The notes: generated by a model not told the origin, from the sequence alone. Positions 6,601-59,290 are shown, counted from the first letter of the stretch. The stretch is 64,000 bases of DNA from Laetmonice hystrix (GCA_965235115.1 OZ249436.1:33790001-33854000); one strand, 5' to 3'. Made by a program: numbers and translations.

Positions 6601-6899
6601 AAAATTGGTATCTTATATACTCTTGTAAACCTTCTAGACATGAAGGAAATTACGAACCTCGTATACTATATTTAGTTGACATATAGGCTTGATTTATATT
6701 AGGTTGTAGGAGATTTCCAGAAAAATGTCCATGTTCTGTCAATGTTGTCATGTTTTCTCGGACCACGGTGCAGCGCTTATGAAATATAATATAATTACAT
6801 GTCAGTTAGACCTTAAAAACTTTGTTTGACATGCAGAAAAAATATTTTGTCGGTAAAGTTATCAAGAGCTCCTCTGTCATGGACAGTATAATCACGAGG

Positions 6900-7490
6900 C
6901 AGCAATGTTAGCATTATCCCTCATAACAGGGCGGCAATGTCGGCAATGCCGCTCATAACGGGGCGGCAATGTTGGCATTGCCCCGCATAACGGGGCGGCA
7001 ATGTCGGCATTGCCCCTCATAACGGGGTGGTAATGTCGGCATTGCCCCTCATAACGGGGCGGCAGTGTCGGCAATGCCGCTCATAACGGGGCGGCATGCA
7101 ATGTTGGCATTGACTCTCATATAACAGGGCGGCAATGCCGGTAATATAGGCCTATGTCCATAACGGGGTGGGACCTAATGTTGGCATTGTCCCTCATAAC
7201 GGGACGGTAATGTTGGCATTGTCCCTCATAACGGGGCGTGACCTAATGTTGGCATTGCCCCTCATAACGGGGCGGTAATATCGGTATTGTCCCTCATAAT
7301 GGGGCGGTAATGTCGACATTGTCCCTCATAATGGGGCGGCAATGTCCGCAATATAGGCCTACCGCTCATAACGGGGCGGCAATGCCTCTCATATAGTAAA
7401 CGGGGCGGTAATGTCGGCAATGTGCCTGGCAACGAGGTGACAATGTCGGCAATGTCCCTGAGGTGGCAATATTGGGAGGTGGCAATGTCG
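6900..7490. repeat. 32-bp hairpin-forming minisatellite (about 15 units, decaying to the right)
   Basis: Consensus TCATAACGGGGCGGCAATGTCGGCATTGCCCC, with units at 6921, 6953, 6985, 7017, 7049 and 7081. Confidence 0.92.
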
Positions 7491-10177: not shown

Positions 10178-10948
10178 TTAAGCCGTCCCACGGTGCCGCC
10201 GTGCCGAAAATGGAAAACTCCCCACTTAATTACAGAGTTAGAATATCTGGTTTGCTCGCCGGTGAAGAAGAGACTGCTTTGCCTCTAGGCCTACGCCAGA
10301 AAATTCGAGAAGGATAGGTATGTTGAGAAATTAGATTTGAACTATGTGCCTGTGCGTAGGAAGAAATTCGCCTATTTACTGCTCATCTCTATACATCCGC
10401 GATGCCGCTTTACACGACTTTGCGCAAATCCTGGGGAAATGGCCGCTTCATACATCCGAGGCCTGGTTCGCCTCCGGCTATGACCTAGAAACAGCCAATC
10501 AGAAGCAGCGTCGGTGTTCCGAGTGGAAAGCACATGTGTTTGTTTACGTTTGCGTGGTGACTACTTTCAATATGGCGACGGTACCGTAAGCCTACAACCC
10601 AGATTTGCTGTAATTTGTCGACGGTGAACGGAGTGCGTTTTTGAGATATGAGCCAAAACAGTGTTATTTGGGGGTCAATAAACAAAATTGGCCGCCACGT
10701 CGCCGTATTTGGGCTTAACAGAGACTAGGCCTACATCGTCATTTTTTTGACACCCTTGGGTACATTGTTACACGTACAAAATAACAAGGAATTACACGTT
10801 TCGAATGGTTCAATTGAAAATTATTTTGTTTGTGGCTCTTTTGAAGGACCTCGACTTCCAAACCTGTAAAATGTTTTCTTGCATCTCTGTATTAAGTTGG
10901 CATGGCGTTATAAGTGAATTAATGAGGTGGAGATGGGGTGATATATAC

Positions 10949-11856
10949 TGTAGCGACCCTGACTGTGGGTGTTAGTTTTAGTACAGGGCCGGGGATAGTT
11001 TACTTCTCGTTGTGTTCATTTACCTCGAAAGGATTGAGACGGTGTGGCTGGAGTGGGGGAAAATGGACTAAGGTGTTAAATATGGGCAAAGAGGGGAGGT
11101 GAGACATAACACAGCATATAGTTGATAATGAAATATATTGGTCACTTCACGGTCCCTGACCCGTTGTGGTTGGCGGCTTACCTGGTTCATGTGCACGTCA
11201 GTTACAAATCAAGATAGCGGGTTTAGACAGGGGGGGGGGTACATCTCTTGGGAGAGCGCCACTCCTTTGGGAGGCGAGCCAGCTAGCAACACACACCGCG
11301 GAACAGCAGGGTAGGTCTTCGGCGCAGAAGGTAGCACTGGGTTGGGAGGCTCGGCATTGACCTATCAGTCGCCAGCCTCAGCCGGACCAGGTTGCCGAAT
11401 GCACTCCCGCTGCTGGAAACTGAAGATTCTCTTGTAGACCAGTGCCGCCAACTGCGCGCTTACTCCGCTCTCCCGACTGCTGCTCTACTGCTGCTCTACT
11501 GCTGCTCAGGCGGGTGGTGGTGCTGGCTGCCGTCCCATCGGAGAGGGTGGATCACTCTCCCCGAATACAGGGCGTGCAGGCCCTTATAAAGGGGGGACCC
11601 TGCAGCCTACCAGGCCGGCGACCAGTGAGGGGCAGCCCTCTCCACCCGGCCAGCGGGGCTGACCAATGGGCAAGCATCCGCCCAGGAGTGGCCTGAGATT
11701 GACGTCTCAGCTCCCCACTTGGCCACGCCCACGCACGCACAGTCTGGACACTGGCGGGTGGGAGGGAGGCCACCACGGTCACCGGCACATACACTAGAAT
11801 AAGGCCTTACAATAAACTTAAGGGAAAAATGCACACACAAACCCAAAATCGCCACA
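10949..11856 (-). repeat. 3' LTR (908 bp)
   Basis: Direct repeat of 18682-19589 at a constant offset of 7733; predicted ORFs in both copies are identical. Confidence 0.97.
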
Positions 11857-11870
11857 TCCCACCCTACCTT
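11857..11870 (-). other. Polypurine tract
   Basis: AGGTAGGGTGGGGA on the minus strand directly abuts the 3' LTR. Confidence 0.85.
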
Positions 11871-12084
11871 CGTAAAAACTCGTCCTCGAGTTTAAGGCAA
11901 GGAGGGAACCACATAAAACGGGAGTACAATCAAAGCTAAGGTCAACAAGAACGTTGACTGACAAAAGTATACTTACAAAAGTACGCTTAAAAACACTCAC
12001 AAAAGTATACTTACAAAAGTACTGTAAAAAGAACTCCTTGGCCTAACACCTGCTTTAATAACTGACCCAAGGAAAAGTAAACGA

Positions 12085-12470
12085 TGGGGAGAGGGGCTGA
12101 TCTGCCTCTCCCTCTCCAGCGGTGGGGTCACACGACAAAACTCTACTTTAACACTGGCCCAGAAAATTAAAAATAACGACTAAGGGGCTAGTCTGCCTCA
12201 GTCTCCAGCGTTGGGGCCTGTAAAACAAAATACGTTAACACAATAATTACATCCTGTCAATCTAACACCGGCCCAGAAAATTAAAATAACGACTAAGGGG
12301 CTAGTCTGCCTCAGTCTCCAGCGTTGGGGCCTGTAAAACAAAATTAACACGAATATCAAGTCCTGACAGTCTGCTTTAAAGTTTAACACTTGTGGCTCAG
12401 AAAAATACAAAATAGCTACTGGGGCAGGGTGCTAATCTACTCTGCCCCCTCCAGCGTTGGAGCCAATACA
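12085..12470. repeat. Tandem units of about 114-121 bp in the 3' internal region of the LTR element
   Basis: ACAC(T/C)GGCCCAGAAAATTAAAAATAACGACTAAGGGGCTAGTCTGCCTCAGTCTCCAGCGTTGGGGCCTGTAAAACAAAAT at 12151 and 12265, with diverged copies on both sides. Confidence 0.85.
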
Positions 12471-12485
12471 CTTTACCTTTACACT

Positions 12486-13223
12486 TTACATAGACGGGGT
12501 CGCCGGAGATTCTAAAGACACAAGAGCCGAGCGCAAGACGTCAATGGCCCTTTGCTGCCTGCTGCCGTTCCTGACCTGTCCCTCCAACTCGTGGATCCGA
12601 CCCTGCCGGGCGTCGATGGCCTGTTGATGGGCCGTTCCTAGGTCTTGCAGGTGGAGCTCGTAAAGCTGCTCCCGCCTATTCCAATACGCCCGTTGTCGCG
12701 TTGTCAGGAACTCCTGTAGATCTCTGGCGTAGCAGAGCCACTCCTCAATACTAGCCAGCTGCTGCTGCAGCTGGGTCAGATGCAGCCCGCGTCCCTCCCT
12801 GTCAGCCGGGACGGGCTGAGCGTCGAGTGCCGGTGTGACCAGACTCTCAGACGGGGGGCGCGTGGGTGACCCATTCCTAAGTTGGGGAGTTGGTGCTGGG
12901 GTGGCCGCCGGACGCCCTGCTGTGGACGCCGCTGGTGTCTGGCCCTGCGGTGGGGGGTTCTGAGAGTGCCGTGGTGACCCTCGGGGGCCCATCTCTCTCT
13001 GCCGACGGTGGCTGGCCTCACGGGGGTGCCCAGGCTGCCCTCCGGTGCGTGCTCCTCGGTGGCCGGGCCGAGTTCGGTCGGCCAGGTGGGGCCTGTCTCT
13101 GCTGGTCGGGGGTCGGCGCTGCCCTCCCTGGGGGCGTGTGACGTCGGGGTTCGGCTGGCCTCCCCTGGCCGCCGCTGTTTCTCCGTCAAAATCGGTGCCC
13201 GCGTGAATCTCAATAGTGTCCAT
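12486..13223 (-). CDS. Accessory ORF (245 aa) of the LTR element; Pro/Arg-rich N-half, helical/coiled-coil-like C-half
   Basis: ATG-initiated and intact, in the same orientation as gag, in the env-like position. No signal peptide or TM segment is evident. Confidence 0.6.
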   Translation of the reverse strand: MDTIEIHAGTDFDGETAAARGGQPNPDVTRPQGGQRRPPTSRDRPHLADRTRPGHRGARTGGQPGHPREASHRRQREMGPRGSPRHSQNPPPQGQTPAASTAGRPAATPAPTPQLRNGSPTRPPSESLVTPALDAQPVPADREGRGLHLTQLQQQLASIEEWLCYARDLQEFLTTRQRAYWNRREQLYELHLQDLGTAHQQAIDARQGRIHELEGQVRNGSRQQRAIDVLRSALVSLESPATPSM

Positions 13224-13452
13224 GACAGCAACTTAGAATGACTTGTTATATCGACCTAGTACAACTCCAGAATGAGGGTCAGTCTCTCCAGCCCTACATA
13301 ATTATACCCTCCAAACTAGGCAAGTAATAAATAGAAGCCTTGTTTAACTTTTATACCTTTTGTAATTTGACACTTTCTTTGCTAACTTGGGGGTTTCACA
13401 TCCTACCCGGTCGTCTCGGCGGGCAGGCAACATCATCCTCACCGCAACTAAC

Positions 13453-13526
13453 GGTTGTCCATAAAAGTATCAGGCTGCTGAGGGTTGTCCATAAAAGTAT
13501 CCGACTGCTGATGGTTGTCCATAAAA
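13453..13526. repeat. 30-bp tandem repeat (3 copies)
   Basis: GGTTGTCCATAAAA at 13453, 13483 and 13513. Confidence 0.85.
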
Positions 13527-15599
13527 CCACCCGGTTTTGTGTAGTAGTCCCTAAAACAATTAGTGGGGGTGTCGGCGGCAGACCAACAGATCAAGGGGAC
13601 TTGCCGCAGTCCGTCCTGTGCGCTGGAGGACGACACCCTGCCGGGGCCTGGACCACGGGGAGGGTGGCGGTGCCACCACGCTGGCCCCCTCATGGCACCT
13701 AACTGGCATGGCCAGCAGACAAAACATCTTCTAGTCTCCAATCAACTAGTTAGTAATACAAAACTACCTAACTACCCATCATATATAGCTGGACTCTGTG
13801 TCCCGCGGAGATTCCTACCGACCATATTACGTCATACTACAAACTCCAATAATAACTGTTTTGAACCTATAAACTTCCCTTAATGCTTCGCTCCACATGG
13901 GGCTCTGTAATAGCACTCAAGTCATATGCAAAAACTGGTGGTCGAATACCCTCGACCTTCCATAAACACAATGAATACATGTGAGAAATAATCACACCTA
14001 AAAGACTAATTCAAACAACTGAAATCCATAACTGCCCCATTGGGAAAAATGTGCTTGCCGCCAAAGCACTGTCAACCAAATACATGTACGTGTGTATATG
14101 TACTCACTAACCCTACCTAACAGGGGAACTGTCACTGAAATAAGTCCCTTGACCTATTCTAACTTGTTCTTCCTAAACAGAGATCACACACCCTGATATA
14201 AAATAAAACATTTCCATGATCAACCACCAGACAAAAGAAAACTGGCTTAGTCCATAAGAGCGACTATGAGTTCCATGACCCATCTTCACGTAGCTATGTC
14301 CAAATAGGACAATCAAAAATAAAAACCTCCGGAGTAACCGCTTAACTCTAGGAAACGTATATCAACGCACAACATCATCTTTCTGGCCAAGTAGCGGCCT
14401 ATATACCCCAGGACCTTTGTCCTGTATCCTCAACGAGTAAACACTTTACACATTAAATTTACAAAGGCACTTGCCTATCCGTATTCACCTATCATATATT
14501 GCTTCTGCAGAAACCTGGCGCCTCCTAACCGGCACATAAGTACACCCATTAACACCATCAATAGCCAGCGATAATACACACACCACACACCAACCCTTGT
14601 TAACTATCCAACTCTCCCCTCATAAAACATTTCCAAGGGATGCTCCTCATCAGAGCCGTCCTGCCGCTAGGATGTAACTCTCCCACACTAGATGTCTTTG
14701 ATGACCGGCGATGTGGTCAGCTCACTGACCGCTCTGTTCTACCGCACTTCACACCTCATCTAATTACTTTGCACTCTTGACCTACCCCGTTGATCAGACA
14801 ACAACTGCGAAAAACTGGAAACTTGCACTCCACACACTCTGTACTAGAATTCACAATAAATAGGTTACATTCACCTGCAACATGTACCTCAAACTGAAGG
14901 AAACAACTTTTGTAGACAAAACACCTGTGTCTACATTTTCACTCTTTAGACTGATTCAGTCCAAATATTCCTCTGATGTTTTTAACTGTATGTCAGTCCT
15001 CAAAAGTCCCAACCTCAACGGATGCCTTCCCTATCACTCAATAAAAAAGATACTGCACCCTCGTGCGACAAAATCAACCACAGCCACAGCTCACTGCTGC
15101 TTCCTCAGCTGTCCATAATGAGTGATAGAGGATCAACCTGACAGCTTGTCCCGATACCAAGAAAAGATAAAACCCTATAAGTCTAGCCGCAACTCATTGC
15201 TGCATCCGTGGCTACCACTGGCGCTTCTCATGGAACGTACGACACTGAATAAATAAAAAAAAATGCACCGAACCTATTGCAGACGAGACAACAAAAGTCT
15301 ATACTTTGGGACTGACACACACATCAGGCAGACTCTCGACTGCTTACTAATCTCTTCATCTATCTCAACAACCCGGGCGTACATATGTGAATACACTAGT
15401 TAACAACACTACTCCTTCCCTTTCTTTCATCTCTCGCAGTTATCATCCCTCCTGTTCAAACGTTACTTGGCGGTCTATTCGTTATACATGTAGACTACTT
15501 CGCCATCCTCAGTTACACCCGATGTTATGTAACATTTTACTGACGCCCTTGGTGTCGCGGGGTTGGGGTGGGTGTGGGTTGCAGGCATCTGCCCTGGGT

Positions 15600-18500
15600 T
15601 TACAATGTCGGGGTGGTCACCATGTGGGTCGCCTTCTGGGGTTCAGACAGGCTGCCGACAGTGTCTGAGACCCACTGCGTCAATGGGGGCCATTGAGGAT
15701 CTCCCCAATGGTCCGAGCTCAATGGTCCGATCTCTCGGTGGCGGGTACGGCTGCATTCCCACAGGCCAACGGACAGGGGGTGTCGCTGCCCAACTTTCAC
15801 ATCATCAAAACCATAAAACGCCTCATCAACACCCTCATCAGGGGGTTCTCCTCCGCTGATGAGCAACTTCTCATCGGGTCCGACCCGCAGGTCAGGTGGC
15901 CCCTCCGTCAATAGTGTTGGGGAGTCCCACAGCTCCACCTTTGTTCTCCCTCCATGGCCGTCTCGACCCTTGGATGTAGGATCGGTCATCCTGTCCCACA
16001 GTGGGTGCATTGTGGGAGGGAGGGTTCCGACTGGCCCATCACCGACTGGACCTGCCTTCCCGGAAACCTGAGGCCTGGTCGTTCGCAGGTCATTACTGGC
16101 AGGCAGCCCAGTCGTCCTCTGGCAACCAAAGTGGGTACTGGGGCCCCCAATAAACTCATTAGGCTCCGCCATGAAGGTGTCAGCTAGGCGATCCCAGCTC
16201 GTTGGGCTGTCCAGCAAGGCCTCCACGGTGGGGGCGGCGTCCCCGACACCAGTTAAAACAATGCCCCTCTGTCCAGGCTCTCTGCCGACATCTCGCCCTG
16301 CATCCCTTTGATATGTGTCCACAGGCACACCCAGACTGCGTGAGGGTCGGAGCCGTGGGACGGGACTGGGTCGGGTGGAGACGGGCGGGGACCGGGGTCC
16401 ACTGGTGCCATCCTGGCTTGTTCCCACGTGAGCACATGAGGGAAGGCACCCAGAACGCATGAAGATCGCCACTCCATTTAATCTGATAACATCGTCCCTC
16501 AGGTCAATCACTCCGTTTTGCTTTAATATGAAATCCAAACCAAGAATACCCTGCAGTCCCCATATGTTAGCAACAATCGTCTCATGTTTGTACTGATGCC
16601 CCTGTACACCCAGCTCTACATCTATCTTCCCGTAGACATCAAGGGGCTCACTATTGACAGTCCTTAACTTAGAATCACTGTGGATTAACTTTGGACGCGC
16701 AGAACTTTCTATATCCAGAAAAACTGATTTGTCAATCACCGTTACCGACGAACCCGTGTCAATCAGCATGTCAGCTGTAACTCCACAAATATCAACCCTA
16801 ACATATTTACACTTTTCTCTAGCCAGAGCTAGTATCATCTCCGACTCATTTGAATTCTGATAATTTATATCATGTGGTTGGTTCCTAGACTGTCCCTCAG
16901 TTGGTTGACTCTGCCTTGCGTCATTCCCACCATCTCTATAATTTGGCCTCTGCCTAACTGGATTTCTTCGCCTCATGTCTTCCTGCCTCAGCATACAATC
17001 GGCTTGGAAATGCCCCTTCTTTTGGCAGTAGAAACAGATACTTTCTCCCCTCCCTGTCCGGGATCTGTCAGTCATCTCTGTCCGCACTGCTTTAACTATC
17101 AGTTCCTGCAGCTGGTTGGGACTGAGGGATGCAGGGGCCGTCAGTTGGCCGTCGGCCGGCACGCGAGGAGGCATAGAGTTCCCGACAGGCTGTACTGCTG
17201 CCAGCCTTCCCCTCCTACTCTTAATAGCCTTGGCTATTGACTGGCTCTCAATAGCCACCGTCACGGCCTCCTCTAGCGTGCGACATCGAGCCTTTCTGAC
17301 GTCCTGCTGCACCTCCTCACTCCACAAACCCTGGCAGTACCGTTCGACCAATTCATACTCATCTCTACCATATGTAGCTGGGAAAGCCTTTCTGTATAGG
17401 TCTTTGAGGGCCCGCCCAAACTCGTCTACAGCTTCACCCTTTATCTGGCAACGGTTGTAATAGTCCGTCCTGAAAGCAACTTGTCTGCCCTCAGGAGCGA
17501 ACCTACTATTTAACATTTGTTTCAGTGACCCCAGGTGGCGTTTCTGGGATGGCTGGAGGTCCCGCATTACCGTGCTGGCCGGAGGTCGCAGAGCAGCCGC
17601 CAGCTGCACGGCAGCCTCGGCATCTGTCCAGCCATTCCAACCAGCCACCTGGTCGAAGTGTTCCTCATAATCCTCCCATTCCCGGGCCTTCCCATCGAAC
17701 TTGTCTAAGTTTAATGGGTCCCTTCTAATTGGTTTGGGGGTGACTGGGCGGGGGTCTCTGTGCCATCTCTCCATCTCACTGTCTCTCCTGCCTCGGCGCA
17801 CGCTGAATCTGGGGTAGTGGCCACCATCACCCTCATCAGCCGAACTATCTGAGTGGCTTGGCCGTTGACTTGGCCATTGGGGGCGGGTGCGTAGAGACAC
17901 AGGGCTGTAGAGATCATAGTCCTTTCTGTGGGGGTGGGGGTTGATATGGGAATATGGTGTGGCCATATGGGAACGGGGGTGACCACGGTGGGGCTCCCTG
18001 TGGGGACGGGGGTCATCATAAACTTCTCTCGGTGTGAGAGCCTCACGCTGTGGGTAGACCTCCTGCTGATGGTGTCCACCCTGCTGTGGGCTGCCCACCC
18101 ACTGGCTTGGGCGGGGGGTGGGACGGGGCCGGCCAGCCGACAGGCGGGGGCGATCTCCCGATGGGTGGGAGGGTGTCCTCACACAATGGGGCTCTGTCCT
18201 TGGCGGGCTGGCCAGTCTGATGGGGCTGTCGGCGTCCTTTCGATGTGGACTGCTGGGTGACTGGGCGTTCCTTCGATGTGGACTGCTGGGGGACTGGTCG
18301 TTCCTTCGATGTGGACTGCTGGGGAACTGGGCGTTCCTTTGATGTGGACTGCTGGGGGACTGGTCTGGCGTTGGGAGCACGTAGTCGGTGACCACGTACT
18401 CATCTGGGGAGTCACAACTATGCACACAGAGTGCATCAACGTACTCAGCCTGGGAGTCACTATGCACACTTAGTGCAACCGACTCCCGGGAGTACGCTGC

Positions 18501-18620
18501 CCGGACATCGCTTCGTTGTCGGCTGCCTAAACTGGAGGTGGATGCATGTCTGCGTAGTAGGCCAGGCAGCGATCTGATAGAGTCAGACAGCCGCCTGAGC
18601 CTGTCCTTTGCCCGGTCCAT
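15600..18620 (-). CDS. Gag-protease polyprotein (about 1006 aa from the first ATG) with an unassigned tail of about 290 aa
   Basis: Gypsy capsid-like region (KFDGKAREWEDYEEHFDQVAGWNGW...LNSRFAP), zinc knuckle CFYCQKKGHFQADC, aspartic protease LIDTGSSVTVI...GILGLDF. First ATG at 18620 (GAG ATG G); the ORF track starts earlier at a TTG. Confidence 0.92.
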   Translation of the reverse strand: MDRAKDRLRRLSDSIRSLPGLLRRHASTSSLGSRQRSDVRAAYSRESVALSVHSDSQAEYVDALCVHSCDSPDEYVVTDYVLPTPDQSPSSPHQRNAQFPSSPHRRNDQSPSSPHRRNAQSPSSPHRKDADSPIRLASPPRTEPHCVRTPSHPSGDRPRLSAGRPRPTPRPSQWVGSPQQGGHHQQEVYPQREALTPREVYDDPRPHREPHRGHPRSHMATPYSHINPHPHRKDYDLYSPVSLRTRPQWPSQRPSHSDSSADEGDGGHYPRFSVRRGRRDSEMERWHRDPRPVTPKPIRRDPLNLDKFDGKAREWEDYEEHFDQVAGWNGWTDAEAAVQLAAALRPPASTVMRDLQPSQKRHLGSLKQMLNSRFAPEGRQVAFRTDYYNRCQIKGEAVDEFGRALKDLYRKAFPATYGRDEYELVERYCQGLWSEEVQQDVRKARCRTLEEAVTVAIESQSIAKAIKSRRGRLAAVQPVGNSMPPRVPADGQLTAPASLSPNQLQELIVKAVRTEMTDRSRTGRGESICFYCQKKGHFQADCMLRQEDMRRRNPVRQRPNYRDGGNDARQSQPTEGQSRNQPHDINYQNSNESEMILALAREKCKYVRVDICGVTADMLIDTGSSVTVIDKSVFLDIESSARPKLIHSDSKLRTVNSEPLDVYGKIDVELGVQGHQYKHETIVANIWGLQGILGLDFILKQNGVIDLRDDVIRLNGVAIFMRSGCLPSCAHVGTSQDGTSGPRSPPVSTRPSPVPRLRPSRSLGVPVDTYQRDAGRDVGREPGQRGIVLTGVGDAAPTVEALLDSPTSWDRLADTFMAEPNEFIGGPSTHFGCQRTTGLPASNDLRTTRPQVSGKAGPVGDGPVGTLPPTMHPLWDRMTDPTSKGRDGHGGRTKVELWDSPTLLTEGPPDLRVGPDEKLLISGGEPPDEGVDEAFYGFDDVKVGQRHPLSVGLWECSRTRHREIGPLSSDHWGDPQWPPLTQWVSDTVGSLSEPQKATHMVTTPTL

Positions 18621-18654
18621 CTCCGCTCTTGAACTCACGCCAGCACACAGCTCC

Positions 18655-18674
18655 AATCCTGGTCACGCGCACCA
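18655..18674 (-). other. Primer-binding site, tRNA-His-like
   Basis: TGGTGCGCGTGACCAGGATT versus the recalled complement of the invertebrate tRNA-His 3' end, TGGTGCCGTGACCAGGATT (one extra G). Confidence 0.75.
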
Positions 18675-18681
18675 GAAATTC

Positions 18682-19589
18682 TGTAGCGACCCTGACTGTG
18701 GGTGTTAGTTTTAGTACAGGGCCGGGGATAGTTTACTTCTCGTTGTGTTCATTTACCTCGAAAGGATTGAGACGGTGTGGCTGGAGTGGGGGAAAATGGA
18801 CTAAGGTGTTAAATATGGGCAAAGAGGGGAGGTGAGACATAACACAGCATATAGTTGATAATGAAATATATTGGTCACTTCACGGTCCCTGACCCGTTGT
18901 GGTTGGCGGCTTACCTGGTTCATGTGCACGTCAGTTACAAATCAAGATAGCGGGTTTAGACAGGGGGGGGGGTACATCTCTTGGGAGAGCGCCACTCCTT
19001 TGGGAGGCGAGCCAGCTAGCAACACACACCGCGGAACAGCAGGGTAGGTCTTCGGCGCAGAAGGTAGCACTGGGTTGGGAGGCTCGGCATTGACCTATCA
19101 GTCGCCAGCCTCAGCCGGACCAGGTTGCCGAATGCACTCCCGCTGCTGGAAACTGAAGATTCTCTTGTAGACCAGTGCCGCCAACTGCGCGCTTACTCCG
19201 CTCTCCCGACTGCTGCTCTACTGCTGCTCTACTGCTGCTCAGGCGGGTGGTGGTGCTGGCTGCCGTCCCATCGGAGAGGGTGGATCACTCTCCCCGAATA
19301 CAGGGCGTGCAGGCCCTTATAAAGGGGGGACCCTGCAGCCTACCAGGCCGGCGACCAGTGAGGGGCAGCCCTCTCCACCCGGCCAGCGGGGCTGACCAAT
19401 GGGCAAGCATCCGCCCAGGAGTGGCCTGAGATTGACGTCTCAGCTCCCCACTTGGCCACGCCCACGCACGCACAGTCTGGACACTGGCGGGTGGGAGGGA
19501 GGCCACCACGGTCACCGGCACATACACTAGAATAAGGCCTTACAATAAACTTAAGGGAAAAATGCACACACAAACCCAAAATCGCCACA
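18682..19589 (-). repeat. 5' LTR (908 bp)
   Basis: Reads TGTGGCG...CGCTACA on the minus strand and is followed by the PBS. No differences from 10949-11856 seen by eye. Confidence 0.97.
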
Positions 19590-19596
19590 ATACCAT

Positions 19597-43121: not shown

Positions 43122-43264
43122 CAGGGCCCATTTCTTAAAAACTTAAGATCTTGCTTAAACTTCAGCTTAACGCTACCGATTGGCTGGTATGCTTAGACCA
43201 GCCAATCAGAACCGTGTTAAGTGTAAGCTTAAGCAAGATCTTAAGTTTTAGAAACTGGGCCCTG
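43122..43264. mobile_element. Fully palindromic MITE (CWG-flanked, Harbinger-like)
   Basis: CAGGGCCCA..TTTCT / AGAAACTGGGCCCTG ends; perfect inverted AAAACTTAAGATCTTGCTTAA arms; inner GATTGGCTGGT / ACCAGCCAATC. Confidence 0.85.
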
Positions 43265-43276
43265 GGACCCGTCTTA

Positions 43277-43405
43277 AGCCCCAGATACATAGACCGATTC
43301 ACGGCCGATCTTGAGATAAAACCGATTTTTCTCCATATTTTTCCTATGGAGAAAAATCGGCCGCATCTCAAAATCGGCCGTAAATCGGTTTGTGTAGCTG
43401 GGCCT
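43277..43405. mobile_element. PIF/Harbinger (Tourist-like) MITE
   Basis: TTA TSD on both sides; imperfect TIRs of about 41 bp (AGCCCCAGATACATAGACCGATTCACGGCCGATCTTGAGAT). Confidence 0.85.
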
Positions 43406-46400
43406 TTAGTAAGAATGTCACTCCCCAAATCAGAGACATTCCTATATTGGGGACATCTCCTAAACACTGTTTCAGTAGAGGGACCTTTTAGTAAGACACC
43501 TCACAACAGGGATTCCCCTGATCTGGGGACTTTGGTGGGGATTTTGCTGGGGATCATCGTTAATAAGACGGGCCCCTGGTCTCTGTTTTTCAGGACAAAC
43601 AGGCATAATAGTTCTCTCCTCATATTCGAGATATTTCGATTATGTGTAATCTTAGTTCATTTTTTGGCAATTATTTACAGACTACCTTGTTTTAGAGGAA
43701 GAACAAAGAAGCTACTCTTGACGATCCAGATACACTCCCATTTCCACGTGTGGGTTTTGCTCGGCCAGCCTCACCACTTCACATTGAGGGGCGTTATTAC
43801 ACAATCATCATGTATGTTTTTTCTAAGGTTACGAAGACAACGTGGCAGATCACCTACCAAAAAAAAAGAAGAACCACCTACTATATAGCAGTATTTCTCA
43901 ATCTTGTCATGGATCCAAATCTGTTCTTCTGCATATACTTCAACCAGAAACTGGTCCTTTTGGGTTATTACCGATAATTGGGAGAACATGACGTTTAGCA
44001 TTGGCAAGGGCCCCTACTCTTGACATTTCCATGACTCTGGGAGTGTGCTATGTGAATAATGAACACATGGGGACGCCGTCTGTCAGCTCCATGACGTCAC
44101 GGCTCGAATGACGGAACGCCATTCTCTGCTAGTCTCAGTGACTCTCTACATGGAACTAAGCTATAAATAAACAAGAAACTCTCATAGAATCGGTCTTAGC
44201 AGAACAACAAATATCTATGTACAGGTTGTCTGAAACGGGCAGACTTCAAGATGACACCCCCTCCCCAGATGACCCCAAAGGTAGGGGCGGTACCAGGTCA
44301 ACTTTGCGACTAATTAATTAGTCCATTGCTGAATAAAGCTGCACGACTCGGTATGAGTAATCACCTACACTCTATGATTAGGTGTACATTCCTTATACAA
44401 GAGTTCCAAGTTCACAATCGGAACAAACTTCCGCCCTTGTGCATACACCCATCTGAAAGTCCAGAGTTGGACTAAACTTCTTCATTCCTGGTATCACAAA
44501 CAGACTTTTCTGTACAAACTGGACTTTTCTTATAGGATGACAATAATTATTAACTAAGAAGAAACTGACGTAGCTTCTGGTATTATATCAGACTACCTCA
44601 ATTTCTCCTTGGTTAGCGATATTTTTAAACGTCTCTACTATCATGAAAACTGTTGTTCCAGTGGATCTTAATATAATAGATGCACGATTCCTTCTTGGCA
44701 TACCTTCTGTTTATGAGAAGTACCGATATTTGTTTTGCACATATCAACTTAGCACTAAAGCACCATATACAGCCAGTTATTGGTGTTAAAGTCTCTCGAA
44801 ATATCAAGAGTTGAGTCAATTTACAGTGATGATCCTAACCCTACTCCCTCTATACACAATCTACAATTAAAATATACATTTCCTTAAAATCTTACATGCA
44901 ACACTTACATATACAGTACTGTACGTTTAATTGTGCCTAGCTGTGATTCAGAACTTATTCATCAGTTTTCTTTATGCTGTGAATTAACTGTTCAGTGAAA
45001 CTGTTCTATCGGCACACACTTGACCTGTATTCTTCTCTGGTTATTTGCTGACCAACTGTTCATATCTACACTACATCATCCGCAAATATATGCTGGCGCC
45101 CCTGCAAGATGAAATTACTAAATTCATGCCACCTGTATCCGATGCAATAGACTGTTTGCTCTGATCAGGTTAGTTTAATGGGTGTGACTGTAATACTGCC
45201 TTCAGAAATATATCCCATCTGAAGTTTTGATGCTAACTAGCCACCATTACAATGTGGTAGTGAGCAATTTTTCAGTAACTATTATTTCTACCAAAATAGT
45301 ACAGACATACCAATTTCCCATGAATGATATGTCATGTGTCATATCAACATAATATTGAAGCCTCAGATCATTTCTATACTGAAATACACAAGTGCCAGTG
45401 CTCTACGGCACTCCTATACTAAGGTTGAGAGGTGTGCATCTTGTATGGTTGATACCAGCAAAGTCACGTGTCGCACAGTCTTCAAGAAACAAACTGTGAA
45501 TTCGCACATCCCTACACCAACGACGGTAATGGATTCTACACTGTTTGTGGACATGTATGAATTTCCATTTACAGTGTCTGTTGTATCGTTGGACTACTCG
45601 GTACCATGATCACATATCAGGCACTTTGATCCCATTCCGACGAGTCAGTAACTAAGTCATACTGAAATACATTGTAAGCATCTTCTCCACTTTTCTCGAT
45701 CCACAACCCCCACCCACTCTTCAAAACGTGTCCCGTGCTCTTCCTGACTGGGGAGCAAGGATATCTGGAAGGCAGTGACAGATATAGATCACTGTCTGTT
45801 CTATATCTCTGTCTTTCCTACACTCGGCTTCTAAATTTTATCACCTTTACTTATCTCATCAAGAAAATGTGCGACAAGAGTTGAGATCGGTGCATTTTTT
45901 GTGTGTATACACTCACGCACGCACACACGAGCACACACGTCTCTTTTACACATGTTTATATACACATACATAAAACTTATTTACCCATGGCACACTCCCA
46001 CACAAACAAAATATGGCAGAGTTTTCTTTTAGGTCAAGAACCCTTGCATGCATGCGTTTCACTTTTGAGTCATGTCTACTTATTATCACAGAAACCAAGT
46101 CCAGATAACCTGTACCCTTATGATCCTAACACAGCATAATGTTGACAAATACTGATAGAAGCCTGGCCTTCTTAGACCGTCACGATACCTGTTTGAATCA
46201 GGTTCAATTCCATCCAAATATGAATTTTGAACAACCTCTCCTCTTTAATCTGCTTTGATTTTGAGAAATTAAGTGCAATGAGTACGAACTTTCCTCCTCA
46301 CATGTACTGAGTATATCTCTTTAAACTTAAAGGTAACACTAACTCTGACTGACCCAAAAGCCACTGCCAAGGGCTTAAGACTGACAAAATTTGGTTTCTG

Positions 46401-53439: not shown

Positions 53440-54360
53440 CTGCCAGACGGACCAGCCATAGTAAACCGAGGCTCTCGAGCCCGTGTCCAACTGTCATGTC
53501 CGCAAACGACCCAGCGGCCATTAGAGGTTCTCGAACCCGTGGTCTACTGTTCATCCACTGTTGACCCAGTCCGCTGGACAGACCAGCGTCAAGGTTGTGG
53601 CTCTCGAGCCCGACACTTTTGCAGCGGTCATTTCAGGTTCTCGAACCCGTGGCCTACTATTCGTGTGTCGTTGGCCCAATTCGAAGGATGGACCAGCAAT
53701 TGCATCGGCATACCGAGGCTCTCGAGCCTGTGGCCGACTGCCAGGTCTACAATGGTCATTTCAGGTTCTCGAACCCTTGGCCTAGTGTTCGTGAGTCGTT
53801 GACCGAAACTGCTAGACGGACCAGCAAATGCATCGGCATACCGAGGCTCTCGAGCCCGAGGGCGACTGCCATGTCCGTCAAACGACCCAGCGGCCATTAG
53901 AGGTTCTCAAACCCGTGACCTAACTGTTCGTCTGTCGTTGACCCGGTCCGCTGGACGACCAGCGTCATGGTCGGCCATCTGTGGCTCTCGAGCCCGTGGC
54001 CGACTGCCATGTCATTCAAACGACCCAAGGGCCATTAGAGGTTCTCGAACCCGTGGCCTAACTGTTCGTCTGTCGCTGACCCCGTCTGCTGGACGACCAG
54101 CGTCATGGTCGGCCATCTGTGGCTCTCGAGCCCGTGGCCGACTGCCATGTCCGTCAAACGACCCAAGGGCCATAAGAGGTTCTCGAACCCGTGGCCTAAC
54201 TCTTCGTCTGTCGCTGACCCCGTCTGCTGGACGACCAGCTTCAAGGTCGGCCATCTGTGGCTCTCAAGCCCGTGGTGGCTGATACTTTTGCCTCGTTGAC
54301 CGGGCCCTTCAGACGGGCCCGAGTCGTGGTCGGCCAAGTTCAGGTTCTCGAACCTGTGAC
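53440..54360 (-). repeat. Coding-type tandem array (core unit about 138 bp / 46 aa) in the DIRS gag region
   Basis: About 14 alternating GGCTCTCGAGCCCGTG / GTTCTCGAACCCGTG cores. Period is 138 bp at 53983, 54121 and 54259; the unit translates as QMADHDAGRPADGVSDRRTVRPRVREPLMALGSFDGHGSRPRAREP. Confidence 0.9.
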
Positions 54361-55045
54361 CGATCAACAGACCAAAGTTGCTTAGCTGAACCGTTTGCAA
54401 CGAGCATCAGCTGAAGTGGATATTGACCCTGAAATTTAACAAACATTTCATACTTTTGAACAGGGGAACAATTTCTACAGTTCTCTCTGAACTACCACCA
54501 GTTTCAGAGGGGTTATTACTACGGGCTGTATCTAAGGAGTTAATAAGAACTGGACACCTTTCAACCCGAGATTCCAGAACTAGCGAGTCTTTCTCTGTAG
54601 ATAGGAAGGCTGAGACCTGGACTCTAGTTTATTCCATTTACCCCGGCCCAAACAGAAAAACTTTTCATGGTTGATTAAATCAAAATCACGGCAAAAGACA
54701 CCCTGGACATGATCGTCCCAATAGGACTTTTGTGCTTGTAACTGGCCAAGTTACGAATGCTAAAACACAATGGACACGACTACTGCGAGACCTTAGCAAC
54801 TGGTTGACCTTAGCAACTGCTTGGCAACGGTAAACAAACGTCGTTTGAAGCTGTCAATTCGCAGAGAGTCTAACAAACTCACTGGTTGAGTAATAACCAC
54901 ACCTACCTTAGTACGCATCGTTCTCAGGGAGGTTGAGGTAGATAGGAAAACCTTACCAGAGTGATAATTCTCCTTAACAAATCGTTCCCCAGGCAAGGCA
55001 ATCCCGCGTAGTGCAACACACATGTTCGCTCCTTGCCTGGCGGAA

Positions 55046-55246
55046 CTACAGTGATTGATATTGGGAGTAGGGTCAATGACCTTTGACCCTCAGGGTCAAT
55101 GACCTTTGACCCACCAGAGGGCGCTGGAGTAGTGGCGGTCCACTGACCGCTAGGTGCTGACCACTGATCATTATTTAAATTTTTAATTCCGCCAGAGTGA
55201 ACTCCGTATACAAATTATCTCATTTAGTTATGGTGGTAAGTAATTT
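55046..55246. repeat. DIRS 5' inverted terminal repeat
   Basis: Reverse complement of 48817-49018. Confidence 0.9.
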
Positions 55247-55426
55247 CATCTATGACACCAACAATCATATGTATGGTATCAGATGGCAATAGTGTACCAG
55301 CGTCCAGACATATCATATATATGCACTTCACATTATTAGTTCCATGAACTGGCAAATTTATACTCATTCATTCCTCTCATTTCACAAATCAGCCGGAATT
55401 ATTTGCTAAATGACCTCCAGACTCAC

Positions 55427-55644
55427 CTTTGGCTGCAGTAACTTTGTTCCCATCAGCGAGCTCGAAAAGCTTGATCTCCGACTCAAGGTGAGGGTTCATC
55501 TTGAGAAAGTTTGGTACAAACAATACGACACTGATGTTGTGGGTGGCCAACTGCCGCGCACAATTTACACCCATTGCTCCTTGATAGTGTGGACCGCAAA
55601 GAACCACGACCTGCGGGCGCTGGTGGGCATTCTTTGGTGTCAAC
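55427..55644 (-). CDS. EDC3: EDC3 coding exon 6 (YjeF-N domain)
   Basis: Encodes LTPKNAHQRPQVVVLCGPHYQGAMGVNCARQLATHNISVVLFVPNF. Acceptor CCTAACAG, donor G|GTGAGT. Confidence 0.95.
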
Positions 55645-55682
55645 CTGTTAGGGGGTTCAGCACAAATTAGTAACTATATTAA

Positions 55683-55954
55683 CCCTTTCCAGTCTGGCCC
55701 AGTACCCTGCCAGGGGACTGGGGGATTTTCAGCCAAAAATATTACACAATAAATTCACAGGGGGAAAAAAGACCATAGATTTTGTTTAAGCAAGTTTGAT
55801 GAGTGGAAACATGTTAAAATCATTATTTTGGAAGGCGGTTCACTCCTAACCATTTGACCTTTGACTTTTGACCATTCCAAAAAAAATCATCCTGTATCCC
55901 GTACGGGACACATCCGGTATGATGGTTTGTGATACGGGATACGACTGGAAAGGG
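55683..55954. mobile_element. piggyBac-like MITE in EDC3 intron 5
   Basis: TTAA|CCCTTTCCAGTC...GACTGGAAAGGG|TTAA; perfect 12-bp TIR. Confidence 0.88.
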
Positions 55955-56230
55955 TTAATAATGGCACTTTAAGTTTAAGATCAGATCCACTATCCATTCC
56001 CAAAAGAAATCAACGATTCTATTGCAGCCAACAGCATAACATGTTCATTAATTTACATTGGCAATTCTTATTGATAATACTGACTCAATCCGAATTTTTG
56101 AATGTTTTCTACATGGCCAGTACTGAAACACTGCTATTTCAATTTCAATGCTACGACTAAGAATCTTTTAAAGGTTTTTTTGATTAGTAATTATATCACT
56201 TTAATACTTGCAAACTACACCTAAACCCAC

Positions 56231-56384
56231 CTGTGACTTCCTCCTAGCAGCTGCATCACCATCTCACTGGCAGATCTACCAATCATCTCCATCTGGCGTT
56301 CGGTGCTCAGTCCATGGTCTTCTGCCACCTCAAAGATACGGCGACGCAACTCATATGTCACACTAGGCACCACCAGCCCAGAAT
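56231..56384 (-). CDS. EDC3: EDC3 coding exon 5 (start of YjeF-N domain)
   Basis: Encodes DSGLVVPSVTYELRRRIFEVAEDHGLSTERQMEMIGRSASEMVMQLLGGSHR. Acceptor TCCACAG, donor AG|GTGGGT. Confidence 0.95.
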
Positions 56385-58339
56385 CTGTGGACAAAGTGCC
56401 ATAGCAAATATATGGTGAAAAAAAAAGTTTTAGTAAGTGAGGACTAACTTGATTTGGCCTAATTTTATCTTCCACTTAAATTCTGTTAAGTTGTCTGGAG
56501 GTTCACTATTAAGAAAAGATGCATCTTTACAATACCTACTTTATCAACTTTATTACTTTAACCTATTCAACAAGTCTTGGTATTCAATTCCTATATATGC
56601 CTTTGTCTTCAAGTAATCCGCTCTACACCAGATCATTTACAAACCCATTCCTATTAAACAACCATCAGGTGTCACTGCTGTGCAGGCTAAACTCTATATT
56701 GCAGCACGTGCTGCCACCTAGCGGGACACATCAACCTCAGATCAAATGAGTCCTTTGCTATTATAAATAAATGCTAGCAATGGAAACACTAGATAAATCC
56801 ATTTAAATTACTTGATGTGACATCATAGATGGGGTTTTCCCAGAAGGGTGGACTATTTCAGGCAGACTCAGGAGAAACTTCAGTCACTGTCTTTTGAAAA
56901 CCCTGCCGAGAGTGATAAAGAACAACTTGCGCATGCTGTCTGCCAGCAAGCGAGCAGACTGATCCTGAATCAATCGAGGCTGGGGTTGTTGGCACAATAG
57001 CAGGCCTATGGCCTAGGGCTAGGCTAGAGGCGGCCGGGTGAGGGGGAGAGGGCAGTTCCACTTGTAAAGAGGGTGGACCAGTAGCACACAGACTGACAGA
57101 CAGTATGCGTGTGTCGACGGGTTACTGCAGCCAGCAGGGCCGGCCCTGGGGTGGCACACCCACTGCTAACACTCTGGTCATGTCAAGTCTGTGCTAATGA
57201 TGTCGGTAGGCCTAATTCCTAGCGACTCCTCATCACTCTCGATGGTTTCTGTCTAGGTTCTAACAAACATGGCTGTAAGCTGCCAACATTTCCCTGGAAT
57301 TCATATTCTCTACCTTCTGAATCACTCAACGCTGTATGTGTGTAGGTTTTTAGTTCCTCCCAAACTGCATCCTCCCCCGCTCGGGGTTGAACAAGCAGTT
57401 GATTCATCCCCCTCCCGCCTGCCCGTCTATTCTTAGAAACGCGTTCCTCGCAGCGCCACCTGTTCTGCCGTCTGAGGCCGCGCCATGAGATTACACACTG
57501 CCTGAGGCGCGATTAATAAAAATTAGCGTGCATTTCTGGTTAGCCAATGGGAACGTTCCCACGGTAAAGTTGTTGTTGTCGAAGCGAAGCGTTGTCGAAG
57601 CGAAGCCAACGATAGCAGCAACGGGTAGGCATTTAATCCCGACACTATAGTGACAGTGAGAGGAACAACTTTGAGTTGACAGGGCTGCAAGAACACACAC
57701 TATAACTAACTGTATTGTTAGGGAGCGACACATTTGTTTATCAGCCACCTGGGCAAGGCTATCACTATCAGGCATTTTTGCGAGAAGTAAGCCTTCGGTG
57801 TGGACCGCTTGTGCAGGTGGAGCGCCGATGACAGGTCCTATTAATATTCATAAGGTTGACCTCAGGGTCAACTTCCGCCCGGTTAGCATGGGCTGCGCTC
57901 AAGGGGTAGAATGCAGGATGCGCGATGCCCCTTGACAACTCAAGATGCCCAAACTGGAGAGCAGTTGTGCTGTGATTAGTCAGACACTGTGACGTCAAAT
58001 TAGCAGACACTATGGCGGCATCCACATGCTGAGCAGGCACTAAAATGCTATATCTGAACTGTTTACCACCAATTGTGTTCAAATCTTTTCTAACAAGTTT
58101 GCTTAAAATTTCAGGGCCTGTGTGCCTGGCCATGTATCCACTTAGGAAAGCCTTTTCTTTTAAATATGCACTGGTGTGTGCAGCCTTATGATATTGTTAT
58201 ACTTACCTTCTCACACTTCTCACATTGTACATTCTCACATTTCCAAACCAATTAATGTTGATCAATTTTTTAACTGCACCACCAGACCCTGCTGATTAGA
58301 TAAATTTCAAAACATGGCACATTACAAAAACAAACTTAC

Positions 58340-58675
58340 CTGCAACATATTCTCTACCAGCAGGATGAGGCACAGTGATCTGGCGGTACTCGACGGGGGC
58401 AGAATTAATTACATTCTCATCATACCTGTAGTTGGTTGCTGGTTTGCTACAGGCTTTAACAATCTTTGGGAAACCAGAGTTCTCTATTTCTTCAAACACA
58501 GCTTGCTTGTCAAACAAAGCCAGATTTTTCTCAAAGTCAAAGTCATCAAGGAACGACTTCATTGGCGCACTGAAGGTGGTCTCCTTCAGGGGTCCCCTTC
58601 GCCCAGGACGAGCGACCCCGTTCTCTACCTTCCGTGGTGTGCTGTTCTGTTTACGTCGATCACGGGATTCAGACT
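58340..58675 (-). CDS. EDC3: EDC3 coding exon 4 (FDF motif)
   Basis: Encodes DDFDFEKNLALFDKQAVFEEI...YRYDENV...YRQITVP, the EDC3 FDF domain. Acceptor TTTGTAG, donor G|GTAAGT. Confidence 0.95.
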
Positions 58676-59093: not shown

Positions 59094-59290
59094 CAGAATT
59101 TGTCCTCCTCCTCATTTCCCCCTGTTCCCATTTTGTTGGGGTCCCATTTGACCTGTGTTGGTTGGGTGCACTGTTGTCATGGAATCCATTCTGCCCGTGA
59201 AAATAGCCATTCTCCTGTTTGCTTGTGTGTTTGGACGGTGTAAAGGGCCCTTCAGATGGCCCGTTGTGAGACTGATTGGTCGGAGTATGC
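59094..59290 (-). CDS. EDC3: EDC3 coding exon 3 (low-complexity linker)
   Basis: Acceptor TATGCAG|G, open frame HTPTNQSHNGPSEG...RRRTNS, donor TG|GTGAGG. Phases (2 in, 1 out) match both neighbouring exons. Confidence 0.7.

What the first reader, a model, noticed from the sequence alone, without database searches (positions are those of the whole stretch)
10949..19589. Very young LTR element that appears to transpose without its own RT, RNase H or integrase (TR-GAG-like)
Seen: LTRs of equal length (908 bp) with no difference found by eye, an intact 4-bp TSD, PBS, PPT and an uninterrupted gag-protease ORF. No YxDD, LPFGL, RNase H, HHCC or DDE motif is visible in the 6.8-kb interior. Known: LTRs are identical at insertion, and gag-retaining non-autonomous elements (TR-GAG) are described mainly in plants. 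Inference: an active parasite-of-parasite that keeps its own capsid and protease and borrows Pol in trans.
Basis: partly seen in the sequence, partly recalled or inferred. Interest (0 to 1): 0.75.

Follow-up and report, generated by a model that had tools for sequence, protein, structure and literature searches.

The report
Young LTR retrotransposon lacking polymerase genes
A freshly inserted gypsy-like retrotransposon copy in an animal genome keeps its capsid, protease and an accessory gene but has no reverse transcriptase, RNase H or integrase, so borrowed enzymes must have copied it; this lifestyle is known, mostly from plants, and here rests on a single copy.

Summary
Window 10949-19589 is an 8,641-bp LTR element on the minus strand. 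Its two 908-bp LTRs are 100% identical, with TG..CA ends, a 4-bp ATAC target duplication, a PBS and a PPT. One open frame of 1,006 codons (ATG 18620 to stop 15600) encodes Gag (CCHC knuckle), an aspartic protease with an intact DTG, and a 265-residue tail. A second ORF (12486-13223) is a lineage-specific accessory gene. Pfam scans and searches with the polyproteins of its closest relatives found no RT, RNase H or integrase in any frame. Those relatives are two multi-copy families in one ENA eukaryote assembly (~70% DNA identity). They carry PR-RT-RH-INT at the position where this element has only the tail.

The 'borrows Pol in trans' reading is well supported for this copy. Whether it belongs to a persistent pol-less lineage or is a one-off deletion made during a single reverse transcription is unresolved, because no other copy from this genome could be reached. 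Three observations favour a lineage: gag, PR and ORF3 evolve at the relatives' rates, the post-PR segment is strongly accelerated yet stop-free, and gag-PR is fused in frame. It is not a strict TR-GAG. I class it as a new member of a known kind.

The parts
10945..10948 (.). Target-site duplication, copy 1 (ATAC)
   Evidence: ATAC immediately outside the LTR on both sides
10949..11856 (-). 3' LTR in element orientation, 908 bp, TG..CA termini
   Evidence: 908/908 identical to 18682-19589. Its first 18 nt (TGTGGCGATTTTGGGTTT) are identical to the L002-type LTR start.
11857..11871 (-). Polypurine tract GAAGGTAGGGTGGGA abutting the 3' LTR, preceded by a conserved AACTCGAGGACGAGTTTT box
   Evidence: position and sequence conserved in L001 and in the L002-type element
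12149..12372 (-). Two ~113-bp direct repeats in the 3' untranslated region
   Evidence: They are similar to repeated units at L001 16297-16706 and L004 2881-3104.
12486..13223 (-). ORF3, 245 aa: lineage-specific accessory protein with a conserved N-terminal motif, a Pro/Arg/Gly-rich middle and a C-terminal helical/coiled-coil-like ~100 aa
   Evidence: E 4e-23 to the L001 3' ORF; 44% identity to P0042 of an L002-type element, and only 2 hits among 1.84 billion representatives. No Pfam family.
13224..15599 (-). Non-coding spacer between the polyprotein stop and ORF3, with conserved boxes at 15001-15035 and about 15075-15094
   Evidence: the 35-nt box is 94% identical in all three families. No ORF piece here hits any Pfam family.
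15600..18620 (-). Single open frame of 1,006 codons plus stop: Gag - protease - tail X
   Evidence: The start MDRAKDRLRRLSDSIRSLPG is conserved with relatives' Gag.
15603..16397 (-). Tail X, 265 aa, Pro/Gly/Thr-rich. It has only faint similarity to the PR-RT linker and/or the integrase C-terminal tail of relatives, and it occupies the place of RT-RH-INT.
   Evidence: marginal alignments, E about 0.003; 0 stops against 8.2 expected; no relatives by word search; no Pfam family.
16398..16856 (-). Aspartic protease region (Pfam domain about 16530-16802; DTG active site intact)
   Evidence: PF13650 E 8e-6; 64-67% identity to the PR of P0001, with the D-T-G and LGLDF motifs invariant.
16995..17039 (-). 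CCHC zinc knuckle of the nucleocapsid part of Gag
   Evidence: PF00098; matches to retroviral NC chains.
17190..17726 (-). Conserved Gag core (ORF aa 311-489), presumed capsid
   Evidence: about 74% identity to Gag of both autonomous families. There are only weak Ty3_capsid and PNMA hits, and the AF2 model was too poor to use.
18231..18363 (-). 33-bp x 4 tandem repeat encoding SPSSPHRRNxQ units in the N-terminal part of Gag
   Evidence: It is an insertion relative to the relatives' Gag.
18559..18602 (-). Conserved RNA hairpin just inside the gag start; candidate cis-acting (packaging or dimerisation) signal
   Evidence: -30 kcal/mol, z -6.25, 0 of 200 shuffles fold as well; the same stem is present in L001 and L002. 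DNA is 94% identical where the surroundings are about 70%.
18655..18674 (-). Primer-binding site TGGTGCGCGTGACCAGGATT, 7 nt downstream of the 5' LTR
   Evidence: it starts with TGG and differs from the L002 PBS by one inserted base. The priming tRNA was not identified.
18682..19589 (-). 5' LTR in element orientation, with a TATA-like TTTATAAGG near 19320
   Evidence: Its terminal GGGTCGCTACA is identical to the L002 5' LTR end.
19590..19593 (.). Target-site duplication, copy 2 (ATAC)

Best explanation
This is a very recent insertion of a non-autonomous ('semi-autonomous') Ty3/gypsy-like LTR retrotransposon in a non-human animal genome. It most likely belongs to a pol-less lineage rather than being a fresh accident. 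It is transcribed from the 5' LTR and makes a Gag-protease-X polyprotein in a single frame, with no frameshift, plus the accessory protein ORF3. Its RNA keeps the cis signals: LTR ends, PBS, PPT, the leader hairpin and conserved internal boxes. Reverse transcriptase, RNase H and integrase must come in trans from an autonomous relative whose Gag-Pol co-assembles with this element's Gag and whose integrase recognises the shared LTR termini. Shown: the anatomy, the absence of RT/RH/INT, the youth of the copy, the homology and synteny with autonomous relatives, and the conservation of cis sites. Inferred: trans-complementation, co-assembly, the role of the hairpin, and lineage persistence.
For: (1) The structure is complete and young: LTRs 908/908 identical, TSD ATAC, PBS and PPT present. 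(2) Gag (CCHC) and PR (DTG) are intact. (3) No RT, RH or INT was found by Pfam, tblastn or HMMER --max. (4) The autonomous relative L001 has gag | PR-RT-RH | RH-INT | spacer | ORF3 in the same order. The window element matches it in gag, PR, the spacer box, ORF3, the 3' repeats and the LTR, but lacks about 3 kb of pol. (5) Three-taxon branch lengths are listed as window / L001-type / L002-type. They are: gag core 0.17/0.13/0.17, PR 0.31/0.14/0.44, ORF3 C-terminus 0.40/0.48/0.33, post-PR linker 1.06/0.12/0.56. At DNA level the linkers of L001 and L002 align at z 19.9, window against L001 at z 4.7, and window against L002 at z 0.3. So the retained genes evolve under the same constraint as in autonomous families, while the segment that used to lead into RT has lost that constraint. 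This is expected if pol was lost many replication cycles ago. (6) The same diverged 265-codon tail has 0 stops against 8.2 expected. None of 5,000 shuffles was open, and the other five frames carry 4-15 stops. (7) Gag and PR are fused in frame, whereas both autonomous families use a -1 frame overlap. (8) The LTR termini, PBS and PPT are identical or nearly so to the L002-type family, although overall identity is only about 70%. This matches the published criteria for autonomous/non-autonomous pairs (PMC11302176).
Against: Only one copy was seen. There is no other copy or solo LTR in the 64-kb window. The element's proteins are absent from the 15-billion-protein collection. Nothing was found in JGI metagenomes or IMG/VR. 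No autonomous partner with matching LTRs is known; the nearest relatives are about 70% identical and come from another assembly. The post-PR alignment is so weak that the 'acceleration' could instead reflect sequence replacement, or a partner family whose own linker is unusual. The open tail could be inherited directly from a functional partner's pol frame through an in-frame deletion. There are no expression data.
Confidence: 0.6

Rival explanations
1. This is a one-off deletion derivative. An autonomous parent of the same family was reverse-transcribed, RT jumped template and skipped RT-RH-INT in frame, and the defective cDNA was integrated by the parent's own enzymes. The copy is then a dead end, not a member of a parasitic lineage.
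For: Identical LTRs and a TSD are produced by any single replication cycle, whatever the internal deletion (established retroelement biology). Only one copy was observed. The faint matches of the tail to the PR-RT linker and to the integrase C-terminal tail fit a deletion with end points in those two segments. The open frame could be inherited from the parent.
Against: The post-PR segment is far more diverged from the relatives than gag, PR or ORF3 are. A fresh deletion would not cause this unless the unknown parent has the same odd linker. The deletion would also have to remove all three enzyme domains exactly, stay in frame, and spare every conserved cis box. The in-frame gag-PR fusion is a second derived feature.
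Confidence: 0.32
2. The copy is older than it looks, or is an artefact. The LTRs could have been homogenised by gene conversion, or the region could have been collapsed or mis-joined during assembly, so that neither 'very young' nor 'pol-less' reflects a real insertion.
For: No read-level data are available. Repeats are error-prone in assemblies.
Against: The TSD is clean, the boundaries are exact, the 1,006-codon ORF and ORF3 are intact, and the order matches the relatives throughout. There are no Ns in the window. A mis-join would not be expected to leave one continuous frame through the junction.
Confidence: 0.04
3. This is a host-domesticated gag-protease gene that happens to retain LTRs.
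For: The ORF is long and intact with a conserved Gag core. Domesticated Ty3/gypsy gag genes exist in animals (own knowledge: PNMA, Arc, PEG10). There is a weak PNMA Pfam hit in relatives.
Against: Identical LTRs, a TSD, a PBS and a PPT are the marks of a new insertion, not of an old co-opted gene. The closest relatives are multi-copy transposons.
Confidence: 0.02

Closest known systems
TR-GAG elements and GAG/PROT-only non-autonomous LTR families of plants (Coffea, Arabidopsis, Triticeae, sugar beet; PMC13570524)
   Same: LTRs, PBS and PPT are present together with a retained Gag ORF, and RT, RNase H and integrase are missing. These elements are regarded as 'semi-autonomous' and mobilised in trans. 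[quoted passage not shown]
   Different: The host here is an animal. The element is 8.6 kb, larger than the size proposed for TR-GAG. It also keeps a protease fused in frame to Gag, a 265-aa tail and a conserved third ORF. No family or copy number has been shown.
RLG_Quinta (non-autonomous) / RLG_Cereba (autonomous) pair of wheat centromeres (PMC11302176)
   Same: The non-autonomous member encodes Gag plus a domain of unknown function in one ORF and lacks RT and INT. Its PBS and LTR termini are conserved with the autonomous partner. It is thought to contribute its own Gag.
   Different: Quinta has no protease, is a high-copy family with a known partner, and is a plant chromovirus. Here the partner is unknown and only cis-site conservation with about 70%-identical relatives is shown.
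Mouse IAP I-delta-1 and ETn/MusD (own knowledge, not checked here)
   Same: These are animal LTR elements with internal deletions that remain highly active by using proteins from full-length relatives. I-delta-1 makes a fused Gag-derived protein.
   Different: They are endogenous betaretrovirus-like (class II ERV) elements rather than Ty3/gypsy-like. ETn has no coding capacity. The I-delta-1 deletion spans gag-pro-pol differently.
Autonomous relatives L001-type and L002-type (ENA assembly ERZ26222911, unnamed)
   Same: They share the gene order gag, PR, spacer with conserved box, ORF3, 3' repeats. Identity is about 74% in the Gag core and 48-64% in PR. The leader hairpin, PBS, PPT and LTR ends are homologous.
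   Different: They carry RT, RNase H and integrase and express pol by a -1 frame overlap. The window element has neither.

Membership tests
LTR retrotransposon, Ty3/gypsy-like lineage | Direct long terminal repeats with TG..CA ends, flanked by a 4-6 bp target-site duplication | tested here: met
   908-bp identical LTRs, TG..CA ends, ATAC/ATAC
LTR retrotransposon, Ty3/gypsy-like lineage | PBS next to the 5' LTR and PPT next to the 3' LTR | tested here: met
   The complementary tRNA was not identified; no tRNA gene is present in the window or the loci.
LTR retrotransposon, Ty3/gypsy-like lineage | Gag with a CCHC knuckle and a retroviral-type aspartic protease | tested here: met
   PF00098, PF13650; DTG conserved. 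The capsid fold was not confirmed (pLDDT 44).
LTR retrotransposon, Ty3/gypsy-like lineage | Pol in the order RT-RNase H-integrase (this order assigns the superfamily) | tested here: not met
   Pol is absent from this element. The superfamily is assigned only through relatives whose pol is PR-RT-RH-INT.
TR-GAG (terminal-repeat retrotransposon with GAG domain) | Retains a Gag ORF while lacking the enzymes RT, RH and INT | tested here: met
TR-GAG (terminal-repeat retrotransposon with GAG domain) | Gag is the only coding capacity (no protease or other ORF), and the element is small | tested here: not met
   The element has a protease, a 265-aa tail and ORF3, and is 8,641 bp long. PMC13570524 notes that GAG/PROT families exceed the proposed TR-GAG size range.
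TR-GAG (terminal-repeat retrotransposon with GAG domain) | A multi-copy family with the same structure at different loci | not testable with these tools
   The source genome is not in any searchable collection.
Autonomous/non-autonomous LTR pair (criteria cited in PMC11302176) | PBS identical or nearly identical to that of an autonomous family | tested here: inconclusive
   The PBS differs by one inserted base from the L002-type PBS. That family comes from another assembly and is only about 70% identical overall.
Autonomous/non-autonomous LTR pair (criteria cited in PMC11302176) | LTR termini (integrase-binding ends) shared with the autonomous family | tested here: inconclusive
   The terminal 11 nt of the 5' LTR and the first 18 nt of the 3' LTR are identical to the L002-type. 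No partner from the same genome is available.

The most novel reading that the evidence does not exclude
An animal genome harbours a long-lived 'semi-autonomous' Ty3/gypsy-like lineage. It discarded RT, RNase H and integrase but keeps under selection its own capsid, its own protease (now fused in frame to Gag, replacing the ancestral -1 frameshift), a new 265-aa C-terminal tail and a lineage-specific accessory protein. It is currently transposing at the expense of an autonomous relative. This would be an animal counterpart of the plant Quinta/Cereba or TR-GAG systems, with the extra feature that the parasite supplies its own protease.
Probability: 0.45. Interest if true: 0.55.

Novelty: new member of a known kind. 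Interest (0 to 1): 0.4.

Why it matters
Non-autonomous LTR elements that keep Gag are well documented in plants but rarely described in animals. If this one is a real lineage, it shows which parts an LTR parasite-of-a-parasite cannot give up: the capsid, the protease, an accessory ORF, a leader hairpin and the LTR, PBS and PPT sites. It also shows which parts it can outsource, namely RT, RNase H and integrase. A zero-divergence copy suggests that the supplying autonomous element is active now in this species. That makes the locus a candidate insertion polymorphism and a marker of ongoing retrotransposition. If it is only a one-off deletion, it is an ordinary by-product of error-prone reverse transcription.

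Tried and rejected
(1) Degenerate pol hidden in other frames was rejected: Pfam on all open pieces, tblastn and HMMER --max found nothing.

(2) RT N-terminal motifs in the tail were rejected. A global MAFFT alignment suggested 'SSDHWGDP' and 'PPLTQW...' vestiges. Local BLAST instead placed 'GLWECS' against the SGFWQ motif in an order that is not colinear, so these are chance matches.

(3) L003 (gag plus a PR-only ORF) looked like a pol-less sister. It is a 99.5%-identical L001-type copy truncated by another insertion.

(4) Other copies or partners were sought by exact look-up of the ORFs, three word searches, gag-profile scans of JGI metagenomes and IMG/VR and a PBS pattern scan. Only the two families of ENA ERZ26222911 turned up.

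(5) The AlphaFold model of the Gag core had pLDDT 44, so no fold search was run. A PDB profile search gave only NC-knuckle-level hits.

(6) ORF3 as an env gene was rejected as unsupported. It has no Pfam family, and its middle is low-complexity, followed by a region that looks helical by eye. No transmembrane or signal-peptide prediction was run.

(7) Rfam and tRNA scans of the window were empty.

(8) The 245-aa ORF at 43151-43888 looks non-coding.

The EDC3-like host gene was searched as a single exon by reference only. 
Full report
OBSERVATION. The two repeats at 10949-11856 and 18682-19589 are each 908 bp and identical at every position. They begin with TG and end with CA, and are flanked on both sides by ATAC (10945-10948 and 19590-19593). 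The window contains no Ns. The coding strand is the minus strand. In element orientation the 5' LTR is 19589..18682. A 7-nt spacer follows, then the PBS TGGTGCGCGTGACCAGGATT at 18674..18655. The PPT GAAGGTAGGGTGGGA at 11871..11857 abuts the 3' LTR. The LTR carries a TATA-like TTTATAAGG about 270 nt from its 5' end.

CODING CONTENT. One frame is open from 18656 to 15600 on the minus strand. The start conserved in relatives is the ATG at 18620, reading MDRAKDRLRRLSDSIRSLPG. Pfam finds a CCHC knuckle at aa 540-554 and an aspartic protease at aa 619-709. The DTG and LGLDF motifs are invariant in the alignment with relatives. The Gag core (aa 311-489) is about 74% identical to the Gag of two related families. 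Its capsid nature is inferred from position and from weak Ty3_capsid and PNMA hits. The AlphaFold model was too poor to use (pLDDT 44). A second ORF at 12486-13223 (245 aa) is homologous to a 3' ORF of both related families (E 4e-23; 44% identity to P0042). It has only those two relatives among 1.84 billion representative proteins and no Pfam family. It is a lineage-specific accessory gene of unknown function.

ABSENCE OF POL. Four independent tests found no RT, RNase H or integrase core. Pfam on 77 open pieces (>=35 aa, six frames, 11857-16460) gave no hit at E<=1. tblastn with PR-RT-RH and PR-RT-RH-INT proteins of the closest relatives matched only the protease. hmmsearch and phmmer --max used the complete 1,280-aa polyprotein P0017 and P0002 against 181 pieces of >=15 aa. 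They gave one marginal hit (i-E about 0.03) between the ORF tail and the extreme C-terminal, non-catalytic tail of the integrase ORF. blastn and tblastx against the autonomous element found nothing in RT, RH or INT.

RELATIVES. The only relatives found come from one ENA assembly, ERZ26222911, which has contigs longer than 1 Mb and NACHT genes and is evidently a eukaryote. It holds two multi-copy families. L001 is a full element with 1,045-bp LTRs that differ at 2 positions. Its genes run gag, PR-RT-RH, RH-INT, spacer, ORF3. The window element is colinear with it at about 70% DNA identity in the LTR 5' part, the leader, gag, PR, a spacer box, ORF3, the 3' repeats and the PPT. Between PR (window about 16400) and the spacer it has only the 265-codon tail, where L001 has about 3 kb of RT-RH-INT. 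L003, which looked pol-less, is a truncated L001-type copy. L004 is the 3' end of an L002-type element and shows that this family has ORF3 too.

LINEAGE OR ACCIDENT? Identical LTRs plus a TSD prove that this copy was made by one recent replication cycle using someone's RT and IN. They do not prove that pol-less elements replicate repeatedly, because a template jump in that same cycle could have deleted pol. No other copy from this genome could be reached, so I relied on internal evidence.

(a) Three-taxon branch lengths, listed as window / L001-type / L002-type, are equal across the families for the Gag core (0.17/0.13/0.17). For the Gag C-terminus/NC they are 0.58/0.53/0.44, for PR 0.31/0.14/0.44, and for the ORF3 C-terminus 0.40/0.48/0.33. 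The post-PR segment is strongly elongated only on the window branch (1.06/0.12/0.56). At DNA level the L001 and L002 linkers align at z 19.9, window against L001 at z 4.7, and window against L002 at z 0.3. All PR pairs give z >= 18.

(b) That diverged segment is nevertheless stop-free over 265 codons. The expectation is 8.2 stops, none of 5,000 dinucleotide shuffles was open, and the other five frames carry 4-15 stops.

(c) Gag and PR are in one frame here, whereas both autonomous families have a gag stop and a -1 overlapping pol frame.

Together these points fit a lineage that lost pol many cycles ago. It kept gag, PR and ORF3 under normal constraint and let the former linker evolve into a new, still translated tail. 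They do not exclude an unknown autonomous partner that already has the odd linker and the fused frame, from which this copy arose by a single in-frame deletion. I put the lineage reading at about 0.6 and the one-off reading at about 0.3.

CIS SIGNALS. Three cis sites nearly match the L002-type family although overall identity is only about 70%. The last 11 nt of the 5' LTR (GGGTCGCTACA) are identical. The PBS differs by one inserted base. The block AACTCGAGGACGAGTTTT-PPT-TGTGGCGATTTTGGGTTT is nearly identical: its last 18 nt match exactly and the PPT differs at several bases. A 44-nt hairpin just inside gag (18559-18602) folds at -30 kcal/mol (z -6.25). It is present with the same stem in all three families, in a stretch that is 94% identical at DNA level. 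The pairs barely vary, so covariation neither supports nor contradicts the structure. Two further boxes in the spacer (15001-15035 and about 15075-15094) are conserved in all families. Keeping these sites is what a trans-mobilised element needs, but their roles are inferred.

HOST. An exon at 58299-58718 (minus strand) matches human EDC3 across the FDF region into the YjeF_N domain at roughly 70% identity. LSM14, FDF and YjeF_N Pfam hits occur among the flanking ORF pieces. The host is therefore an animal and not human.

COMPARISON WITH KNOWN SYSTEMS. Gag-retaining non-autonomous LTR elements are established in plants. TR-GAG elements and 28-29 sugar beet families retain only GAG/PROT (PMC13570524). 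Wheat RLG_Quinta encodes Gag plus a domain of unknown function, lacks RT and INT, and shares its PBS and LTR ends with autonomous RLG_Cereba (PMC11302176). From my own knowledge, mouse IAP I-delta-1 and ETn/MusD are animal analogues among ERVs. The present element works like these. It is not a strict TR-GAG, because it has a protease, a tail and ORF3 and is 8.6 kb long. The family and partner criteria could not be tested. Verdict: a real feature, correctly described, and a new member of a known kind. Interest is moderate and would rise if a census shows a persistent pol-less lineage.

Noticed in passing
window 18559-18602 (-); L001 8412-8455; L002 1149-1192: A very stable hairpin (-30 kcal/mol, z -6.25) lies in the first 20 codons of gag. 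It is 94% identical at DNA level across three families that are otherwise about 70% identical, which suggests an RNA-level function such as packaging or dimerisation overlapping the coding sequence.
   Followed up: partly
window 15001-15035 and ~15075-15094 (-); L001 14390-14513; L002 6797-6831; L004 871-905: Two non-coding boxes lie about 0.5 kb downstream of the polyprotein stop and are conserved in all families. One is purine-rich (TAGGGAAGGCATCCGT..AGGTTGGGAC) and resembles the 3' PPT, so it may be an internal PPT or another cis element.
   Followed up: partly
window 12486-13223 (-): ORF3 is a conserved 3' accessory ORF of this retroelement lineage. It has the N-terminal motif MD.[IL]E[IL]HAG.DFD.ETA, a low-complexity middle, and a helical C-terminus ending RAIDVLRSAL..LE.P.TP. 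It has only two relatives in 1.84 billion representatives, and its function is unknown.
   Followed up: partly
window 16880-17000 (-) vs L001 9780-10080 and L002 2600-2900: Both autonomous relatives have a gag stop (…PPLN*/…PQLN*) with pol open in the -1 frame across a conserved PVKLN(S/R)AGLETN overlap. The window element has gag and PR in the same frame.
   Followed up: yes
window 18231-18363 (-): A 33-bp x 4 tandem repeat (92% matches) encodes SPSSPHRRNxQ units in the N-terminal, probably disordered part of Gag. It is absent from the relatives' Gag.
   Followed up: no
window ~54000-63900 (-), e.g. exon 58299-58718: A host gene resembling EDC3 (enhancer of mRNA decapping 3) is present, with LSM14, FDF and YjeF_N domain hits. 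The FDF exon is roughly 70% identical to human EDC3, which shows the host is a non-human animal.
   Followed up: partly
window 6894-7350 and 53626-54275: Two tandem arrays are present: a 32-bp minisatellite (13.6 copies, internally palindromic unit) and a 128-138-bp repeat (about 4-5 copies) in a GC-rich stretch.
   Followed up: no
L003 13758-17411: In the related assembly, a 1,217-aa ORF with faint zf-C2H2 and weak Endonuclease_7 hits sits just downstream of where an L001-type copy breaks off. It is possibly part of another mobile element.
   Followed up: no
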